Counted from the first letter of the stretch, positions 1-62,026 are shown. The stretch is DNA of 64,000 nucleotides from Octopus sinensis (GCF_006345805.1 NC_043022.1:20770001-20834000), one strand, 5' to 3'. Notes: generated by a model not told the origin, from the sequence alone. Made by a program: numbers and translations.

Positions 1-153
1 ACGCGGTGGGAAGGGGCTGTTGACACAATCGTTTCATTCACAAATTTGAATTCGGTGATACTAGTGAGGATTCCAGCTCGCTCGATACTGAGTTGAGTTG
101 GTGCCTCTCTAGTATCTCAAAATTCAATATATAATCATTTATGATTATGGTAT

Positions 154-260
154 TCCACGCTGAAGAGAAAAGAAGTTTCGGTAAGATAGAATTATTTAAT
201 ATTTAATATTTTAATTCTTATGCTTTCCTAAAACTTGATTTCGAAACGTACGTCCGTGGA
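154..260 (+). ncRNA. Type I hammerhead ribozyme, monomer 1
   Basis: Stem I TCCACG(154-159)/CGTGGA(255-260); core CTGAAGA 160-166; long imperfect stem II 167-242 (GAAA/TTTC, AAGTTT/AAACTT, GAATTA/TAATTC); GAAA 243-246; palindromic stem III ACGTACGT; GUC cleavage triplet, cut after 254. Confidence 0.9.
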
Positions 261-751
261 TAACTTTAAAAATGTTTGATAGATTGCGGTTAATTCATTC
301 TCTTTACCTGTTTGTGTCAGCCTTCCAATTGCTGTTTTTACTGAGATCTCCCTTTTTAGTAGAAGAAATAGCTATAACCCTTTGACTGCTATTTCTAAAT
401 TCGGTATGTGGTAAGGCAATTCGTTGCTGACCCTTATTGCTTAGTATTACTTAAATTTTCCTCAAATGAGGCTTTTACATGCCGAAGACTACTTGGTGTA
501 ATTGATAATTATTCCAAATTAATTAATTTCACCCTTCATTATACGGATAACCATATTTTATCTCAGTAGATGACTACAGCATCTTGTTTTGGCTACACGC
601 GGGTGGGAAGGGGCTGTTGACACAATCGTTTCATTCACAAATTTGAATTCGGTGATACTAGTTGAGGATTCCAGCTCGCTCTGATACTGAGTTGAGTTGG
701 TGCCTCCTAGTATCTCAAAATTCAATATATAATCATTTATGATTATGGTAT

Positions 752-858
752 TCCACGCTGAAGAGAAAAGAAGTTTCGGTAAGATAGAATTATTTAATAT
801 TTAATATTTTAATTCTTATGCTTTCCTAAAACTTGATTTCGAAACGTACGTCCGTGGA
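752..858 (+). ncRNA. Type I hammerhead ribozyme, monomer 2
   Basis: Same motif as 154-260: CTGAAGA 758-764, GAAA 841-844, cut after 852. Confidence 0.9.
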
Positions 859-1352
859 TAACTTTAAAAATGTTTGATAGATTGCGGTTAATTCATTCTC
901 TCTTCCTGTTTTGTGTCAGCCTTCCAATTGCTGTTTTTACTGAGATCTCCCTTTTTAGTAGAAGAAATAGCTATAACCCTTTGACTGCTATTTCTAAATT
1001 CGGTATGTGGTAAGGCAATTCGTTGCTGAACCCTTATTGCTTAGTATTACTTAAATTTTCCTCAAATGAGGCTTTTACATGCCGAAGACTACTTGGTGTA
1101 ATTGATAATTATTCCAAATTAATTAATTTCACCCTTCATTATTACGGATAACCATATTTTATCTCAGTAGATGACTACAGCATCTTGTTTTGGCTACACG
1201 CGGGTGGGAAGGGGCTGTTGACACAATCGTTTCATTCACAAATTTGAATTCGGTGATACTAGTTGAGGATTCCAGCTCGCTCTGATACTGAGTTGAGTTG
1301 GTGCCTCCTAGTATCTCAAAATTCAATATATAATCATTTATGATTATGGTAT

Positions 1353-1458
1353 TCCACGCTGAAGAGAAAAGAAGTTTCGGTAAGATAGAATTATTTAATA
1401 TTTAATATTTTAATTCTTATGCTTTCCTAAAACTTGATTTCGAACGTACGTCCGTGGA
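1353..1458 (+). ncRNA. Type I hammerhead ribozyme, monomer 3 (GAAA reads GAA)
   Basis: CTGAAGA 1359-1365. CGAACGTACGTC lacks one A of GAAA, either a homopolymer error or an inactivating deletion. Confidence 0.75.
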
Positions 1459-1880
1459 TAACTTTAAAAATGTTTGATAGATTGCGGTTAATTCATTCTC
1501 CTTACCTGTTTGTGTCAGCCTTCCAATTGCTGTTTTTACTGAGATCTCCTTTTTAGTAGAAGAATAGCTATAACCCTTTGACTGCTATTTCTAAATTCGG
1601 TATGTGGTAAGGCAATTCGTTGCTGAACCCTTATTGCTTAGTATTACTTAAATTTTCCTCAAATGAGGCTTTTACATGCCGAAGACTACTTGGTGTAATT
1701 GATAATTATTCCAAATTAATTAATTTCACCCTTCATTATTACGGATAACTATATATATATATATATATATATCATGGCTATAATGCATACGTGCATATAT
1801 GTGGGTATACATTCATATATGTAAGTATTCGTATGTTGTGCTTATATATATATATGTATTTATGTTTCTCTTCTATGTGT

Positions 1881-2619: not shown

Positions 2620-2692
2620 TGGATTTTGGCGCAATGGATAACGCGTCTGACTATGGATCAGAAGATTCCAGGTTCGAATCCTGGCAAGCTCA
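2620..2692 (+). pseudogene. tRNA-Arg(ACG)-derived pseudogene, anticodon mutated to ATG
   Basis: Body TGGCGCAATGGATAACGCGTCTGACTA[T]GGATCAGAAGATTCCAGGTTCGAATCCTGG matches the metazoan tRNA-Arg-ACG sequence as I recall it. The 5' acceptor strand TGGATTT pairs poorly with CAAGCTC. A T7 run follows. Confidence 0.85.
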
Positions 2693-2704
2693 AATTTTTT
2701 TAGC

Positions 2705-4890: not shown

Positions 4891-5627
4891 AGGTTGGAAT
4901 TCCCATCTTGAAATTAATAATCCTTTCTATTACAAGCACAAGGCCTGAAATTTTGGAGGGGGATGGATACTTAATTACATCAATCCCAGTCCTCAATTGG
5001 GACCTATTTTTTCGACCCCAAAAGGACAAATGGCAAAGTCGACCTCGGCGGAATTTGAACCCAGAATGTAAAGATAGGCAAAATACCACTAAGCATTTTG
5101 TCCAGCATGCTAACGATTCTGCCAGCTCGCTGTCTTCATCTTGAAATGAAGAATAAAGTAGGATTCAAAGAGATTTCTATAAACAAAATATGAATAAACA
5201 GTCCACCAACTCCAAAAAAAAGAACAATAAAATTCATTAAACAAAAAAACTAAAACAAATAAAGTAAAATAATTTGCATAATTATTATTTCTTTTAATAT
5301 AATTATCTTGATAACATCATTAACCAGCTTGTTCAAAGCATCAACAAAATTAAAGTGATGTGTGTGTGTGTGTGTGCATGCACTTGTCCCCCACCGCTGC
5401 TTGATAACTGGTGTTAGTGTGTTTACATCCCCATAACTTAGCAGTTTGGCAAATGAGAATGATAGAATAAGAACCAGTACTTGGAAAAAGAAAAAAAAAA
5501 ATTTGGCCTGGGGTTGATTCCTTCGACTAAAAATTCTTCAAGGCTGTGCCCCAGCATGGCCACAGTCAAATGACTGAAACAAGTAAAACACAGAAGACAA
5601 GAATACAATCTAAACCAAAGAACCAAC

Positions 5628-6154
5628 CTTTATTTTTAATTCCGTCAATTCTTCATCCATCCTTTCATTCTCTTCCAGAACGGTGTTCACTTCCTCTTCG
5701 TACTTGTCCTTCATCCGTTTTTCAGACATTTGCCATTTCTCATGGATTTTCTGAAGTTCTTCATCGAAATCTGTCTCCAACTGCTCTTGAAATTTCATTT
5801 CAACCTGGATGGAGATGTCAGTGGTTTTGAGTGATGCTACTGGTGTTGCTGCTATTGCTGCTGTTGCTACCGCTGCTGCAGATGCCTTTACAGGTTCTGC
5901 AGTCTCTGCTACTGTCACTACGGAATCTCTTCCTTCAATCTCAGCATCCTTTGAAATATTGCCATTACATGTAGATGCTTTGTTAACAATAGCTGTCATC
6001 GGCACTTCCAAAGTTTCTGTTTGGATTTTTGATTTTACTTTGGTCTGCAGCTCGGCTCGCTCTGCCAGAAGATAAGCGAACTGATCCTGGCATTTTAAAT
6101 CCAAGATGGTATGAAGATCAGCATCTTCCAACATTTTTCTCAGCTCCTTTTGCA
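5628..6154 (-). CDS. CCDC30: CCDC30-like, coding exon 4 (VQKELRKMLEDADL...DQFAYLLAERAEL...ELTELKIK)
   Basis: Acceptor aaaaacAG, donor GTTGGT; 527 nt, phase 1 to 0. EMLE..L....EQIAYLL.ERA.L-type motif and coiled-coil heptads resemble long CCDC30 isoforms. Confidence 0.8.
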
Positions 6155-6279
6155 CTGTTTTTCAGAAATTAAAAAAAAAAAAAATGTTTTTAAATAAAGA
6201 AACAAAACAAAGATTCAAAAGAAAACAAACAACAAAATACTGAATGACAAAAAAAAATTTATAAAAAATAGTATATAGG

Positions 6280-8826: not shown

Positions 8827-8866
<40 letters not shown>

Positions 8867-8889
8867 ATATATATATATATAATATATTA

Positions 8890-9135
8890 ATAAATAAAAC
8901 ATATGCATATATATATACATATATGTACGTACAAACCTCTACATGTATATATACACGCATATATGAGTACAGGACACCAAAAAAACGTTGAACACAATGA
9001 GAAACGAAAACATAGACACAAACCCAAGGAACTGGACATTTTTCTTAAACAACAAAAAAATAGAGTACAGGACAAATAACACAAGGAAAAAACCCTTCTT
9101 CAGTCGCCATGGTTTCATCTACACAATGTTTCGAA
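8890..9135. mobile_element. Fragment of the repeat family also in the 871-bp tandem (53330-53560), probably Penelope-derived
   Basis: Shared GAGTACAGGACACCA...GAACACAA(T/C)GAGAAACGAAAACATA. Confidence 0.55.
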
Positions 9136-16601: not shown

Positions 16602-17090
16602 TCAAAGTAAATTAAATTCATTTTCACTGCATTCTGCGAAAGTACAATTATATGCATGTAGGCATCTCAAGAGTCTTTCAGAAATTCTATTAATGATCTT
16701 CTCATTAGTCCACAGAATAGACAGGGATTCCTCGGAGCAGGGATGACATCTCCTGCAAATTATATTGTATGGTTTCACATGCCTTACTATGGACCAAGTT
16801 ATGCTGTACTTCATTTTATCCTCCTTCAGTTGCCATACAAAATCTGCCAAATATGTTGAATGTCTCTTATTGATTGTCTTTAAGCTGACAACATTGTTAC
16901 AATAACGATTCTTAAATGAATCAGCTGTCTGCCCAATGTAAACATATGGCCCTCCCCTTGTGTGCACAGTACATTTATATACAAGATTTGTACTCATACA
17001 GAGATTCATCAAAGGACATTTTGATTTTTCTCTGCATGAGCATTTATAATATTTATTTGTATATAAAGCAGTCCTGACTCCACTTACCAA
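16602..17090 (-). mobile_element. Penelope-like element GIY-YIG endonuclease fragment
   Basis: CPL...C...NLVYKCTV...YIGQTADSFKNRY...STYLADFVWQLK...ITWSI...C..C.EE...IN..SE...C.H follows the PLE GIY-YIG C-terminal pattern. Confidence 0.88.
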
Positions 17091-52750: not shown

Positions 52751-53049
52751 TTTAGTAACACTAAACACACGTAATCATTTGGTGAGAGTGATTTCCCTTT
52801 CGTCGTTGGTTAGTGGTGGTGGTAATGGGGGAATATAGGCTTTAGTGCACGACTGTTTGTATATATATAAATACAATAAGAGGCTTCCAAATAGGAAAGC
52901 GTTGTGCTAGAAAGAGCAGTAGAAATCTCAAGACCACAAAGGCCACTGGTAATAATAATTTATTATATATATATATATATATATATGCAATTGTTTCATA
53001 CGAACAGATTTATTAAAAGCTGCAAATATTGCAGCAAAAACTCATATGT

Positions 53050-53141
53050 GTTTTGGCTGATGAATACGGGACACTTGTTTTTGCTGCAATATTTGCAGCT
53101 TTTAATAAATCTGTTCTTCGTATGAAACAATTGTACTGAAC
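53050..53141 (+). ncRNA. Type I hammerhead ribozyme, 871-bp unit 1
   Basis: Stem I (G)TTTTGG/CTGAAC with two G-U pairs; CTGATGA 53057-53063; stem II ATACG/CGTAT with inner GCTGCAA/TTGCAGC; GAAA 53124-53127; palindromic stem III ACAATTGT; GUA, cut after 53135. Confidence 0.8.
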
Positions 53142-53806
53142 AACTAATCCATTCTTGTTTATAATCACCCCACATTATTTAATGGTTAATACCGTATAGA
53201 TTTCTGGTGCATCTAAGTTAAGTAACGCATTCATGTGAATTCATTGGAACTCACTTGAATCTTAATTGCTTTTACTGAAAATATATATATATGTGTGTAT
53301 TATAACAATTTAATAAATAAAACATATGCGTACATACATATATGTACATACCTACATCTATATGTATATATACATGCATATATGAGTACAGGACACCACA
53401 AATAAACGTAGAACACAACGAGAAACGAAAACATAAAACCATACAAGGAAACAGACTTTTTTTAACAACGAAAAAAACAGGGTACAAGACAAACAATACA
53501 AGGAATATTCCCCTTCATCAGCTGCCCCTGTTTCGACTCAATGCGTGTTTCGAAGTATATATATATTGGAATGTGTGTGTGTGTGAAAGAGATAGAGAGA
53601 GAGAGAAAGAATGTGAGAACAAATTGTCACCTTAAAAGAACAATTAGAAGTTACAGTTACAAGAGTAGGTTATAGCTGATGTCGAGATTTCAGGTTAATA
53701 CAGATTTAGGGGTAATATAGATAGATAGGAAATCTTTGTATCCAATTTAACGTGGATGTTGTGTTAGTTAGAACACCGGTGTTCTAACACACACACAAAC
53801 ACATTC

Positions 53807-53853
<47 letters not shown>

Positions 53854-53920
53854 ATATGCAATTGTTTCATACGAACAGATTTATTAAAAGCTGCAAATAT
53901 TGCAGCAAAAACTCATATGT

Positions 53921-54012
53921 GTTTTGGCTGATGAATACGGGACACTTGTTTTTGCTGCAATATTTGCAGCTTTTAATAAATCTGTTCTTCGTATGAAACA
54001 ATTGTACTGAAC
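53921..54012 (+). ncRNA. Type I hammerhead ribozyme, 871-bp unit 2
   Basis: Identical to unit 1; cut after 54006. Confidence 0.8.
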
Positions 54013-54678
54013 AACTAATCCATTCTTGTTTATAATCACCCCACATTATTTAATGGTTAATACCGTATAGATTTCTGGTGCATCTAAGTTAAGTAACGCA
54101 TTCATGTGAATTCATTGGAACTCACTTGAATCTTAATTGCTTTTACTGAAAATATATATATATGTGTGTATTATAACAATTTAATAAATAAAACATATGC
54201 GTACATACATATATGTACATACCTACATCTATATGTATATATACATGCATATATGAGTACAGGACACCACAATAAACGTAGAACACAACGAGAAACGAAA
54301 ACATAAAACCATACAAGGAAACAGACTTTTTTTAACAACGAAAAAACAGGGTACAAGACAAACAATACAAGGAATATTCCCCTTCATCAGCTGCCCCTGT
54401 TTCGACTCAATGCGTGTTTCGAAGGTATATATATATTGGAATGTGTGTGTGTGTGAAAGAGATAGAGAGAGAGAGAAAGAATGTGAGAACAAATTGTCAC
54501 CTTAAAAGAACAATTAGAAGTTACAGTTTACAAGAGTAGGTTTATAGCTGATGTCGAGATTTCAGGTTAATACAGATTTAGGGGTAATATAGATAGATAG
54601 GAAATCTTTGTATCCAATTTAACGTGGATGTTGTGTTAGTTAGAACACCGGTGTTCTAACACACACACAAACACATTC

Positions 54679-54734
<56 letters not shown>

Positions 54735-56141: not shown

Positions 56142-56890
56142 TTGATGAAAATATCTGATGACATTGGATACAATGACCTGATCTACAATAATGCGCTGAT
56201 TGAAATCGAGGATGCCCTGCTCAAAATGGGTGGGGCAGCGTTGAACACATTCAGTTTGCCATCCTCACTACGACAGGATGTTAATATACTCGCACCAATG
56301 TTACTTCTGGAGTTGTCACATGAGGCTGATGGCCTTGCTGAGTACCTGAGAGTAAATGAACCGAAATTGCTCCCTGATCAGAGGCTGGCGTACGAAACTG
56401 TCATCGGTGCTGTTGAAAAACAAGCGGGCGGCATTTTTTTCCTTGATGCTCCTGGAGGTACCGGAAAATCCTTTGAAAACACAATTAATACTTGCTAAGA
56501 TTCATCACAAGAAACAAATTGCGCTAACTGTTGCCTCCTCAGGAATCGCTGCTACGTTATTGCCGGGAGGTAGGACTGTGCACTCAGCATTCAAGCTGCC
56601 TTTGGATTTGGTGAGGGCTGAGGTTCCTACTTGCAACATTGGCAAAAATTCAAAGGAAGCTGAAGTTCTTAGACAGTACTGTCTCATTGTATAGGATGAA
56701 TGCACAATGGCCAATAAGGGTGCCCTTGAGGCACTGGACCGGTCACTGAAAGATATCCGGGATTCTACAGCTTCTATGGGTGGTGTAACTCTATTGCCTT
56801 CAGGAGATTTAAGGCAAGCCCTTCCTGTCATCCCGAAAGGGAGCAGGGCTGATGAAGTGCGTGCATGCCTTAAGTCATCCATGTTGTGGC
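56142..56890 (+). pseudogene. Helitron PIF1-like helicase fragment
   Basis: IFFLDAPGGTGKSF (Walker A); VASSGIAATLLPGGRTVHSAFKLP; IV*DECTM (Walker B with stop); GGVTLL.SGDLRQ.LPV; one frameshift. Confidence 0.92.
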
Positions 56891-59484: not shown

Positions 59485-59861
59485 TCTCTCTCTATATAAA
59501 CGGCAGTTTGTCTGTGCGTGTTTCTGTGTGTCTGTTTGCTTGTACCCTCACCCTGACCACGGCTTTCAACCGATTCTGATGAAACTTGACACACACATAG
59601 CCCAATGTCATAATTCAAAACTAACGCAGCGAAAATTTTGAAAAGTTCCCCAGTTCTGAAAAAAATCGATAAATTCGACATGGAGTCGAGAATCAGAAAC
59701 ACAAACCGCAAACTGTCTAGGGGACGCAACTCCACCTTTTTTACTAAAATAAAAATTTACCATCATTTTTTCCATGTTTTGCTATTTTTGGCTATAACTC
59801 TCTAAAAATGCTTATAGTTATTTCCCTTACAATCCTGAGCAACGCCGGGCGATACTGCTAG
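59485..59861 (+). mobile_element. Non-autonomous Helitron
   Basis: A^TC start; 3' hairpin CCTGAGCAACGCCGGG then GCTAG^T. Another Helitron-type 3' end at ~60290-60317. Confidence 0.8.
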
Positions 59862-60417: not shown

Positions 60418-60617
60418 TTATCTATCAGGAAACATGTCTTCAGTGCTGGTGCTGTTATCTCCTATGACTTCCAAACATACAGAAGCATATTCACTAAATA
60501 TGGGTTCTTGCATGGCTGCTTCAATGGCATGGCTTATGTTATCTGATGAGTTTAGTCTAATAAGCATGTCCCGTAGATGCTGGTTGCTGAGAAGCTCATG
60601 TAGTTTCTTAGATGTGT
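60418..60617 (-). CDS. ZNHIT3: ZNHIT3-like last exon (DTSKKLHELLSNQHLRDMLIRLNSS...AAMQEPIFSEYASVCLEVI...)
   Basis: LL.N.HLR.....L...AMQEP.F.E.A..CL motif of the ZNHIT3/Hit1 C-terminal domain; acceptor tttttcAG, phase 1; TAA at 60418-60420. Confidence 0.88.
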
Positions 60618-62026
60618 CTGAAAAATAAAAGATATTGATTTTTAGCAACAATAGAGACATAGTTTTGTGGTCAAAAAGTTCATTTTGCAACAACGAGAAA
60701 TGTGCCACCAGGAATTGAACACAGAACCTTATGATCATGAGCTGGATACCCTAGCCACTAAGCCATGCACCTTCACTGTGGAAGAGGAAGACCGAGGGAA
60801 ACAGTGGAAGAAGTGAGGAAAGCTGATCGCAAGAGGCTGAACATCACAAAGAAATTTTGAGATTAAATCATTTTTCCTACCAATGGTAGAAGGCCTGAAA
60901 ATTGGGGTTGAAAGGGTGGGGGTTAGTGAATTAAATAGGCCCCAGTGCTTGACTGATGCTTTATTTTATTGACCCCAAAAGGATAAAAAGCAAACTTGAC
61001 CACAGTGGGATTTGAACTCAGAAATGTTATCAAGCATTCTGTCCAATGTTCTAATGATTCTGCCACCTTATTGAGATTAATTAATGGTTTCAAATTTTGG
61101 CACAAGGCCAGCAATTTTTTTTTGGTGGGGGGGGGGGATAAGTCAATTACATCAACCACGGTACTCAACTGGTACTTATTTTATCAACCCCCTAAAGAAT
61201 AAAAAGCAATGTCGACCTTGGCAGAATTTGAACTCAGAACATGAAGTCAGATAAAGTGCCCCTAAGCATATTGCCCAGCATGCTACCCTCAATTAGCCAC
61301 ATGCACCACTGGTGGTTTATTGTAAATTTCACACAACCGCCATATGCACCACCAGTGGTACATTTTTATAATCTGAGTAAATATTTTATTCTCTATCTTT
61401 GACATGGTTTCAAGAATATTTAAAGAACATGAGTGCTAAATATGAAAGTTTAATCATAAAATATTGAAAACAATTATATCTCTCAATGACTGGCATCCGT
61501 GCTAGTGGAGCACTAAGAGAACCATATGAGTGAGATTAGGGCTAGAGCAACAAGCTGGCCTCCGAGCCGATACCAAGTTAAAAACGCCATTTGAGCATGA
61601 TCGTTACCTGCGTTGCCTTACTGGCACTTGTGCTGGTGGCACGTAAAAAAAAACATTAAGTGAGGTTGTTGCCAGTGCTGCTGGACTGGCTCCTGCGCAG
61701 GTGGCACATAAAAAGCATCATTTGAGCGTGGCCGTTGCTAGTACCGCCGGACTGTCCCTCGTGCCAGTGGCATGTAAAAGCACTCACTACACTCTTGGAG
61801 TGGTTGGCATTAGGAAGGGCATCCAGCTGTAGAAACCCTGCCAGATCAGACTGGAGCCTGGTGCAGCCATCTAGTTCGCCAGTCCTCGGTCAAATCGTCC
61901 AACCCATGCTAGCATGGAAAGCGGACGTTAAACGATGATGATGATGATGATATGGAAAGTGACCACGTGAAATATGTGGCGTTACCAGTAAGTTCCAGAA
62001 ATAGGCTGTGGCAGTTAATGTGTTAA

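What the first reader, a model, noticed from the sequence alone, without database searches (positions are those of the whole stretch)
1..1750. Tandem ~600-nt monomers each carrying a canonical hammerhead ribozyme: candidate cephalopod retrozyme array
Seen: every monomer has stem I, CTGAAGA, stem II, GAAA, a palindromic stem III (ACGTACGT) and a GUC site. Cuts after 254, 852 and 1452 would release 598/600-nt monomers. The monomer has other strong hairpins (GATACTAG/CTAGTATC extended by TTGAATT/AATTCAA; AGAAATAGC/GCTATTTCT; CCTCA/TGAGG), no ORF of 60 aa or more, and the array ends in (TA)n. Established: tandem type I HHR repeats with palindromic stem III define metazoan non-LTR retrozymes (newt satellite 2, schistosome Sm-alpha, cricket pDo500), which yield circular RNAs and are thought to be mobilised by Penelope-like elements. 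Inference: this is such an element, with a monomer longer than the usual few hundred nt and an unusually long (76-nt) stem II. It lies antisense and immediately downstream of the last placed CCDC30-like exon, probably in an intron.
Basis: partly seen in the sequence, partly recalled or inferred. Interest (0 to 1): 0.92.

Follow-up and report, generated by a model that had tools for sequence, protein, structure and literature searches.

The report
Tandem repeat carrying hammerhead ribozymes
The window starts inside a head-to-tail array of about 599-base non-coding repeats, each carrying a complete self-cleaving hammerhead ribozyme motif with an unusually long second helix; this fits a known kind of animal mobile element (a non-LTR "retrozyme") rather than something new in kind.

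Summary
Window 1-1749 (+) holds 2.9 head-to-tail copies of a 598-600-nt unit. Two copies carry a complete type I hammerhead: a 6-bp helix I, CUGAAGA, a 76-nt helix II, GAAA, the palindromic helix III ACGUACGU, and GUC. The third copy reads GAA instead of GAAA. This is a 1-nt homopolymer deletion, like most differences between the copies, so it may be an assembly error.

The motif is not chance. It gave 0.007 hits per shuffled window. None of 593 scrambled-core decoys on the real sequence matched its helix I or its palindromic helix III. The (+) monomer RNA is highly self-paired (z = -6.0), and its minimum-energy fold brings the two ends together in helix I.

Rfam finds no hammerhead family here even at E <= 10, probably because of the long helix II.

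A second, unrelated hammerhead-like motif with the same design lies at 53052-53140 and is repeated at +871.

Best reading: a non-LTR retrozyme-type array, giving about 600-nt linear and circular RNAs and mobilised by Penelope-like elements. Cleavage, expression, copy number elsewhere, host taxon and the "CCDC30-like" neighbour could not be verified. It is a new member of a known kind, of moderate interest.

The parts
1..1749 (+). Tandem array, 2.9 copies of a 598-600-nt non-coding unit. It is cut off by the window start, so it may extend further upstream.
   Evidence: Alignment; blastn of the monomer against the window, 98-99% identity and no other copy in the 64 kb; longest ORF 55 aa; G+C 0.35.
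154..260 (+). Hammerhead 1 (type I): helix I 154-159/255-260, CUGAAGA 160-166, helix II 167-242, GAAA 243-246, helix III ACGUACGU 246-253, C17 254. Predicted cut after 254.
   Evidence: Sequence; descriptor hit; helices I and II appear in the unconstrained fold, and the full hammerhead fold is within 1.1 kcal/mol of it.
255..852 (+). Full monomer as it would be released by cleavage (598 nt).
   Evidence: MFE -166.1 kcal/mol against -125.4 +/- 6.8 for shuffles, z = -6.0. About 64% of bases are paired, and helix I joins the two ends in both the linear and circular folds.
752..858 (+). Hammerhead 2, identical to hammerhead 1. Predicted cut after 852.
853..1452 (+). Second full monomer (600 nt).
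1353..1458 (+). Hammerhead 3 with a defective core as assembled: GAA (1442-1444) instead of GAAA, so A15.1 is missing. Helices I and II are intact, and the GUC ends at 1452.
   Evidence: Sequence; alignment column 592; the indel lies in an A run; not found by the descriptor.
171..238 (+). 68-nt AT-rich hairpin extension of helix II. It starts at a 2x2 internal loop (A.A, G.G) that follows the four base pairs next to the core, and it takes the place of the usual closed loop 2.
   Evidence: Sequence; fold.
1750..1771 (.). (TA)11 microsatellite at the 3' end of the array. The last unit stops at monomer position ~297, where the full monomer reads CCATATTTTA.
53052..53140 (+). Second hammerhead-like motif, unrelated in sequence but of the same design. 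Helix I 5 bp (2 G-U), CUGAUGA 53057-53063, helix II 60 nt (A-U closing pair), GAAA, palindromic helix III ACAAUUGU 53127-53134, A17 53135. Repeated at +871 (53923-54011).
   Evidence: Descriptor; decoy control; no sequence similarity to the first family. Sequestered in a 146-nt hairpin, -88.4 against -27.7 kcal/mol for the hammerhead fold.

Best explanation
The array is a tandem set of non-autonomous, non-coding repeats of the metazoan non-LTR retrozyme type, the class that includes newt satellite 2.

Proposed mechanism:
1. The (+) strand is transcribed as a multimer.
2. Each unit folds a type I hammerhead. This forms either alone (2-bp helix III with a GUAC loop) or, more stably, as a double hammerhead in which the palindromic ACGUACGU segments of two neighbouring units pair into an 8-bp helix III.
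3. Cleavage after GUC (C254, C852, and C1452 if its core is intact) releases a 598-600-nt RNA with 5'-OH and 2',3'-cyclic phosphate ends.
4. Helix I holds those two ends together in the highly self-paired monomer. This favours closure into a ~600-nt circular RNA by a tRNA-type ligase or by the ribozyme's reverse reaction.
5. New genomic copies would be made by the reverse transcriptase/endonuclease of Penelope-like elements, which favour microsatellite targets such as the (TA)n at the array's 3' end.

Shown here: the array, the complete core in two units, the three helices, non-randomness, the strong self-pairing, the dimer fold and the (TA)n junction.

Inferred from the family's published behaviour: transcription, cleavage, circularisation and mobilisation by Penelope-like elements.
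For: - Tandem structure and 98-99% identity between copies.
- All conserved hammerhead positions are present in copies 1 and 2: C3 U4 G5 A6 N7 G8 A9, G10.1-C11.1, G12 A13 A14, A15.1-U16.1, C17.
- The geometry equals the published canonical metazoan type I motif: helix I 6 bp, helix II 4 bp then a loop, helix III 1-2 bp with a small palindromic loop (PMC4209133). A 2-bp helix III with a tetraloop is called typical of invertebrate retrozymes (PMC7229834).
- Chance is excluded at about 0.007 hits per window by shuffling. With 593 scrambled cores on the real sequence, none reached a 6-bp Watson-Crick helix I or a palindromic helix III.
- The unconstrained fold forms helices I and II, and the hammerhead-constrained fold costs only 1.1 kcal/mol.
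- Two hammerhead segments co-fold at -55.4 against 2 x -21.5 kcal/mol, with an 8-bp intermolecular helix III.
- Monomer RNA z = -6.0 on (+) against -4.6 on (-). Helix I closes the monomer ends.
- No ORF >= 60 aa. G+C 0.35, below the 45% given for the family (PMC7229834).
- The 3' end is at (TA)11. PLE clades show an insertion bias for microsatellites, with (TA)n commonly observed for Naiads (PMC8557442).
- A second, unrelated element in the same window has the same unusual design (long helix II, 8-nt palindromic helix III) and is also bounded by (TA)n.
Against: - No Rfam hammerhead model matches, even at E <= 10.
- The closed loop 2 that normally contacts helix I is replaced by an internal loop plus a 68-nt hairpin, so fast cleavage is not assured.
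- One of three cores is broken as assembled.
- Only one locus of this family is visible, and no other copy was found in the window. None could be retrieved from any searchable collection either.
- The three copies are nearly identical, so there is no covariation evidence.
- No Penelope-like reverse transcriptase was found among the ten window ORFs scanned.
- (TA)n tracts are common here, 40 tracts in 64 kb, so that junction is suggestive only.
- PLE hammerheads tested in vitro cleave poorly. For the one PLE reconstituted in vitro, unprocessed RNA was the main substrate (PMC4209133, PMC11167929).
Confidence: 0.68

Rival explanations
1. A relic or plain satellite. The repeat descends from a hammerhead-bearing element, but the ribozyme no longer works, or never worked with its 68-nt helix II insert. 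The array grew by DNA-level tandem duplication, not through RNA circles.
For: - No Rfam hit.
- Loop 2 is replaced by a long hairpin.
- One broken core.
- Only three near-identical copies at one locus.
- The second array is clearly a DNA-level duplication of a composite 871-bp block.
Against: - The core is perfect in two copies.
- Helix I, helix II and the palindromic helix III are all intact.
- The hammerhead fold is essentially the minimum-energy fold.
- The single defect is of the same kind as the probable sequencing indels.
Confidence: 0.17
2. The units are pseudo-LTRs of an autonomous Penelope-like element whose ORF lies upstream of the window start. The array would then be part of a full element, not a separate non-autonomous retrozyme.
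For: - The window begins inside the array, so its 5' side is unseen.
- PLEs are organised in tandem or partial tandem, with the hammerhead in the pLTR (PMC8557442, PMC4209133, PMC11167929).
- Retrozymes and pLTRs are reported to be close relatives (bioRxiv 10.64898/2026.07.22.740005).
Against: - Three consecutive units follow one another with no ORF between them.
- No reverse transcriptase domain was found among the ten window ORFs scanned.
Confidence: 0.1
3. A chance motif or an assembly artefact. On this view the hammerhead-like pattern is fortuitous, or the tandem copies were created by mis-assembly of noisy long reads.
For: - Differences between copies are mostly homopolymer indels, the signature of uncorrected long-read errors.
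- The window edge cuts the array.
Against: - Shuffle and decoy controls.
- A few true substitutions distinguish the copies, which argues against simple duplication of one read.
- A mis-assembly would change the copy number, not the presence of the motif.
Confidence: 0.05

Closest known systems
Metazoan non-LTR retrozymes (coral, mussel and axolotl repeats; Cervera & de la Pena 2020, PMC7229834)
   Same: Head-to-tail non-coding units, each with one type I hammerhead. Low G+C. Highly self-paired monomer RNA. Helix III of 2 bp plus a palindromic tetraloop, as in invertebrate members. No LTR, PBS or PPT.
   Different: The monomer is ~599 nt against 170-400 nt, though it is within the 51-972 bp range reported later. 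Helix II is 76 nt with an internal loop where loop 2 should be. Expression as circular RNA and multiple genomic loci are not shown here.
Newt/salamander satellite 2 hammerhead (~330-bp repeats)
   Same: A tandem repeat with a type I hammerhead. Its weak, palindromic helix III allows a double-hammerhead between neighbouring units (PMC7229834, PMC4209133). The dimer fold is predicted here too.
   Different: The newt helix III has a single base pair and the conserved loop 1-loop 2 contacts. Here helix III has 2 bp, and loop 2 is replaced by a long hairpin.
Minimal hammerheads in pseudo-LTRs of Penelope-like elements (Cervera & de la Pena 2014, PMC4209133)
   Same: Type I topology, G10.1-C11.1, palindromic 15.2-16.2/loop 3, longer-than-usual helix II, and association with tandem arrangements.
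   Different: PLE motifs have helix II of 6-8 bp, helix I of 4-5 bp, often an extra base before 10.1, and they flank a reverse transcriptase ORF. Here helix I is 6 bp, helix II is 76 nt, there is no extra base, and no ORF is present.
Rfam Hammerhead_1 and the other Rfam hammerhead families
   Same: The same conserved core and three-helix junction, by direct reading of the sequence.
   Different: No match to any Rfam hammerhead family at E <= 10.
Naiad-clade PLE 'HHR_half_core' cases (Craig et al. 2021, PMC8557442)
   Same: The two halves of the hammerhead core are separated by an unusually long spacer (35-50 nt there, 60-76 nt here). (TA)n is a commonly observed insertion site.
   Different: Those cases did not fit any hammerhead stem/loop descriptor and lie in 3' UTRs of autonomous elements. 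Here all three helices are well formed and the unit is non-coding. No link was tested.

Membership tests
Hammerhead ribozyme, type I | Conserved core: C3 U4 G5 A6 N7 G8 A9, G12 A13 A14, A15.1-U16.1, H17 | tested here: met
   Present in copies 1 and 2 at 160-166, 243-246, 246/253 and C254 (and at +598). Copy 3 lacks one A of GAAA.
Hammerhead ribozyme, type I | Three helices around the core, with helix I open-ended | tested here: met
   Helix I has 6 Watson-Crick bp. Helix II is closed by G-C, with 4 bp, then an internal loop, then an extension. Helix III has 2 bp plus GUAC, or 8 bp as a dimer. Helices I and II appear in the unconstrained MFE.
Hammerhead ribozyme, type I | Match to a curated covariance model (Rfam hammerhead families) | tested here: not met
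   No hammerhead family at gathering score or at E <= 10. The likely cause is the 76-nt helix II. This could not be tested because the tool takes no edited sequence.
Hammerhead ribozyme, type I | Tertiary contact between loop 1 (or a helix I bulge) and loop 2 | tested here: inconclusive
   Internal loops lie at the canonical distances: after 6 bp in helix I (U.U, A.A) and after 4 bp in helix II (A.A, G.G). There is no closed loop 2, and the conserved loop nucleotides could not be compared.
Hammerhead ribozyme, type I | Site-specific self-cleavage | not testable with these tools
   Needs transcription and cleavage assays.
Metazoan non-LTR retrozyme | Head-to-tail tandem units, each with a type I hammerhead | tested here: met
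   2.9 units with three hammerhead positions, two of them with an intact core.
Metazoan non-LTR retrozyme | Non-coding, no LTR/PBS/PPT, G+C below 45% | tested here: met
   Longest ORF 55 aa. G+C 0.35. No tRNA-like or other Rfam element in the unit.
Metazoan non-LTR retrozyme | Monomer of a few hundred nt (170-400 nt in PMC7229834) | tested here: not met
   598-600 nt. This is inside the wider 51-972 bp range of bioRxiv 10.64898/2026.07.22.740005.
Metazoan non-LTR retrozyme | Highly self-paired monomer RNA | tested here: met
   z = -6.0 against 100 shuffles. About 64% of bases paired.
Metazoan non-LTR retrozyme | Many copies dispersed in the genome | not testable with these tools
   There is one locus in the window. 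No eukaryotic genome collection is on hand. Searches of protein, metagenome and viral collections found nothing.
Metazoan non-LTR retrozyme | Expressed as linear and circular RNA | not testable with these tools
   No transcriptome access.
Metazoan non-LTR retrozyme | Co-occurrence with, and sequence relation to, Penelope-like elements | tested here: inconclusive
   No reverse transcriptase domain among the ten window ORFs scanned. The host species was not identified. The (TA)n junction is compatible with PLE target bias (PMC8557442).

The most novel reading that the evidence does not exclude
This genome may carry a lineage-specific style of type I hammerhead. In it, loop 2 is replaced by a 60-76-nt hairpin, so the motif escapes the Rfam models; published structure descriptors were not run here. 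It occurs in at least two unrelated (TA)n-associated repeat families. These could be the missing ribozyme partners of (TA)n-targeting Penelope-like elements of the Naiad type, which are currently said to lack canonical hammerheads. They could also be the source of an unrecognised population of ~300-600-nt circular RNAs.
Probability: 0.15. Interest if true: 0.6.

Novelty: new member of a known kind. Interest (0 to 1): 0.42.

Why it matters
It would also be a natural source of ~600-nt circular RNA. Its 76-nt helix II is a natural test of how much the loop 1-loop 2 contact can be remodelled without losing cleavage. It also shows a practical blind spot: standard Rfam annotation misses the motif entirely, so such elements are probably under-counted in repeat-rich invertebrate genomes. 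This is an incremental addition to a well-described family, not a new mechanism.

Tried and rejected
- Rfam, whole window at gathering score and both arrays at E <= 10: no ribozyme family of any class on either strand. The hits were only spurious AT-rich miRNA-like hairpins.
- TRF did not report the array, because its longest period is 500.
- More copies, protein route. Exact look-ups of the 55-aa and 59-aa spurious ORFs of the two repeat families found nothing. A homology search with the 55-aa ORF found nothing.
- More copies, DNA route. Two pattern scans of metagenome contigs and one of viral contigs found nothing.
- Host species. The ZNHIT3 exon search found nothing. The repeat ORF gave only unnamed Logan contigs. 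SINE k-mers and the run accession were absent from the paper library.
- 'CCDC30-like' neighbour. No Pfam match, and three unnamed distant hits that also lack a CCDC30 domain.
- My impression that ORF 16602-17090 (-) is a GIY-YIG nuclease, which would be a Penelope-like hallmark: not supported by Pfam or by a PDB profile search.
- Homology between the two hammerhead-bearing families: none.
- A weak third descriptor hit at 59576 (helices of 3-4, 2 and 1 bp) was treated as chance.

Full report
**1. What is in the sequence**

Window 1-1749 (+) is a head-to-tail array. It holds a partial unit (1-254), two full units (255-852, 598 nt; 853-1452, 600 nt) and a partial unit (1453-1749) that runs into a (TA)11 tract at 1750-1771. 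Copies are 98-99% identical, and the monomer has no other copy in the 64-kb window. The window begins inside the array, so its true length is unknown. Tandem Repeats Finder missed it only because its longest period is 500. The longest ORF on either strand is 55 aa, and G+C is 0.35.

**2. The hammerhead**

Copies 1 and 2 contain, in order:
- UCCACG (154-159), the 5' strand of helix I
- CUGAAGA (160-166)
- a 76-nt helix II (167-242), closed by G10.1-C11.1
- GAAA (243-246)
- ACGUACGU (246-253), with A15.1-U16.1 as its outer pair
- C17 (254)
- CGUGGA (255-260), the 3' strand of helix I

Copy 2 is identical at +598. Every position that defines the hammerhead core is present, and the topology is type I.

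The geometry matches what Cervera & de la Pena (PMC4209133) call the canonical metazoan motif. That motif has a helix I of 6 bp, a helix II of 4 bp followed by a loop, and a helix III of 1-2 bp capped by a small palindromic loop. The one departure is in helix II. After its four pairs there is no closed loop 2. Instead there is a 2x2 internal loop (A.A, G.G) leading into a 68-nt AT-rich hairpin (171-238).

The third hammerhead is not intact as assembled. It reads G1442-A-A-C1445, so one A of GAAA is missing.

**3. The differences between copies look like sequencing noise**

Pairwise comparison of the units gives 1-3 substitutions against 4-6 single-base indels, mostly in short homopolymer runs. 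In the second array (section 7) the two copies differ by 0 substitutions and 5 homopolymer indels. This is the signature of uncorrected long-read errors. The GAA in copy 3 may therefore be an artefact, and the true copies may be almost identical. It also means that no covariation evidence can be drawn from this locus.

**4. Is it chance?**

I wrote a descriptor requiring:
- helix I of at least 5 bp
- CUGANGA
- helix II of at least 4 bp and up to 110 nt
- GAAA
- helix III of at least 2 bp
- H17

On the real window it hits only copies 1 and 2 of this array and one other locus, all on the + strand. Two controls followed.

| Control | Result |
|---|---|
| 300 dinucleotide-preserving shuffles | 2 hits in total (0.007 per window, both strands) |
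| 593 scrambled-core decoys on the real window, which keeps its true hairpin content | 26 loose hits (0.044 per decoy) |

Of the 26 decoy hits, none fell inside either array, none had a 6-bp Watson-Crick helix I, and none had a fully palindromic helix III. The motif is not fortuitous.

**5. Folding**

The unconstrained fold of the hammerhead region forms helices I and II. Forcing the complete hammerhead costs only 1.1 kcal/mol (-27.6 against -28.7).

Two hammerhead segments co-fold at -55.4 kcal/mol, against 2 x -21.5 for the separate monomers. The co-fold has an 8-bp intermolecular ACGUACGU duplex. This is the double-hammerhead arrangement described for newt and PLE motifs (PMC4209133, PMC7229834).

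The released 598-nt (+) RNA folds at -166.1 kcal/mol, against -125.4 +/- 6.8 for shuffles (z = -6.0). The (-) strand gives z = -4.6. About 64% of bases are paired. In both the linear and circular folds, helix I pairs nucleotides 1-6 with 498-503, which brings the two cleavage ends together. That arrangement would favour ligation into a circle.

**6. The negative result**

No hammerhead family appears at gathering score or at E <= 10, and no other ribozyme class appears on either strand. The most likely reason is the 76-nt helix II, which the models must score as a long insertion against a core of only about 15 informative positions. I could not test this, because the tool does not accept an edited sequence. 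A formal membership criterion is therefore unmet, and the ribozyme call rests on direct reading plus my own controls.

**7. A second, unrelated element of the same design**

The descriptor also found a motif at 53052-53140, repeated at +871. It has:
- helix I of 5 bp, two of them G-U
- CUGAUGA (53057-53063)
- a 60-nt helix II, with an atypical A-U closing pair
- GAAA
- helix III ACAAUUGU (53127-53134), again an 8-nt palindrome
- A17 at 53135

It shares no sequence similarity with the first family. It is a weaker candidate. An inverted copy of its 3' half lies just upstream (52988-53045), so a 146-nt hairpin of -88.4 kcal/mol competes with a hammerhead fold of -27.7.

The 871-bp repeat is also a composite block that was duplicated at the DNA level. 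Its interior (53283-53540) is a dispersed repeat that is also found at 8861-9116. The hammerhead-bearing segment proper is about 295 nt (52988-53282), bounded by (TA)n on both sides.

Even so, two unrelated repeats share a long helix II and a perfect 8-nt palindromic helix III, while none of 593 decoys produced a palindromic helix III. This argues that the design is real and recurrent in this genome.

**8. Comparison with what is known**

The features testable here match metazoan non-LTR retrozymes (PMC7229834):
- tandem non-coding units with a type I hammerhead
- G+C below 45%
- a highly self-paired RNA
- a helix III of the invertebrate kind

The monomer is longer than the 170-400 nt first described. 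A 2026 survey reports consensus lengths of 51-972 bp, with an average of 650 bp in ray-finned fishes (bioRxiv 10.64898/2026.07.22.740005), so length alone is not unusual.

That survey and PMC4209133 tie such repeats to the pseudo-LTRs of Penelope-like elements. PLEs show an insertion bias for microsatellites, and (TA)n is commonly observed for the Naiad clade (PMC8557442). This is compatible with the (TA)n junctions of both arrays. However, (TA)n tracts are frequent here (40 tracts of at least 8 repeats), and no PLE reverse transcriptase was found among the ten window ORFs scanned.

In the library I searched, no paper reports hammerhead retrozymes in cephalopods. I could not confirm that the window is cephalopod at all. 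No search returned an organism name. The window is clearly from a repeat-rich animal genome, with:
- SINE-like and LINE-like repeats
- a PIF1-helicase remnant
- a ZNHIT3 exon

The 'CCDC30-like' label for the ORF at 5610-6155 (-) is unsupported.

**9. Verdict**

The interpretation as a retrozyme-type hammerhead array is the best-supported reading (about 0.68). Its functional steps (cleavage, circles, mobilisation) are inferred from the family, not shown. The rivals are:
- an inactive relic or plain satellite (about 0.17)
- pseudo-LTRs of an autonomous PLE lying upstream of the window (about 0.10)
- chance or an assembly artefact (about 0.05)

I file it as a new member of a known kind. Its notable structural twist is the long helix II that hides it from Rfam. 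Interest is moderate.

Noticed in passing
window 52964-54725 (+); motif at 53052-53140 and 53923-54011: Second hammerhead-like motif (CUGAUGA, 60-nt helix II, GAAA, palindromic ACAAUUGU, GUA), unrelated in sequence to the first array. It lies in a ~295-nt (TA)n-bounded segment inside an 871-bp composite block that is tandemly duplicated. A 146-nt hairpin (52988-53133) would sequester the hammerhead fold.
   Followed up: partly
window 1-1749 and 52988-54680: Repeat copies differ mostly (family 1) or only (family 2) by single-base indels, mainly in homopolymer runs. Family 2 shows 0 substitutions and 5 indels. This suggests uncorrected long-read errors in the assembly, so small frameshifts and core 'defects' in this window should be read with caution.
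   Followed up: yes
window 2620-2693 (+): tRNA-like sequence (Rfam tRNA 46.4 bits; ARAGORN calls it tRNA-His with anticodon atg) 0.85 kb downstream of the array. Possibly a tRNA pseudogene or the head of a tRNA-derived SINE.
   Followed up: no
window 53283-53540 and 8861-9116 (+): A ~255-nt dispersed repeat (about 78% identical by blastn) that in both places starts right after a (TA)n tract. (TA)n tracts seem to be general landing sites for repeats in this genome (40 tracts of at least 8 units in 64 kb).
   Followed up: partly
window 56142-56694 (+): Two overlapping ORFs in different frames match the PIF1-like helicase domain (Pfam PF05970, E = 6e-16 for the second). This is probably a frameshifted remnant of a Helitron-type element, 1.4 kb from the second array.
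   Followed up: no
window 60418-60738 (-): ORF with a ZNHIT3 C-terminal domain (Pfam PF21373, E = 6.7e-14), probably an exon of a host gene. No homologue of compatible length was found in the 5.8-billion-protein collection.
   Followed up: partly
window 16602-17090 (-): A 162-aa Cys-rich ORF with four 61-74% identical relatives, all on short Logan contigs, so it is a repeat-family ORF. It has no Pfam or PDB match. My recollection-based resemblance to a GIY-YIG nuclease was not supported.
   Followed up: yes
Only residues 121-178 of the first find distant, unnamed relatives, and no Pfam family matches.
   Followed up: partly
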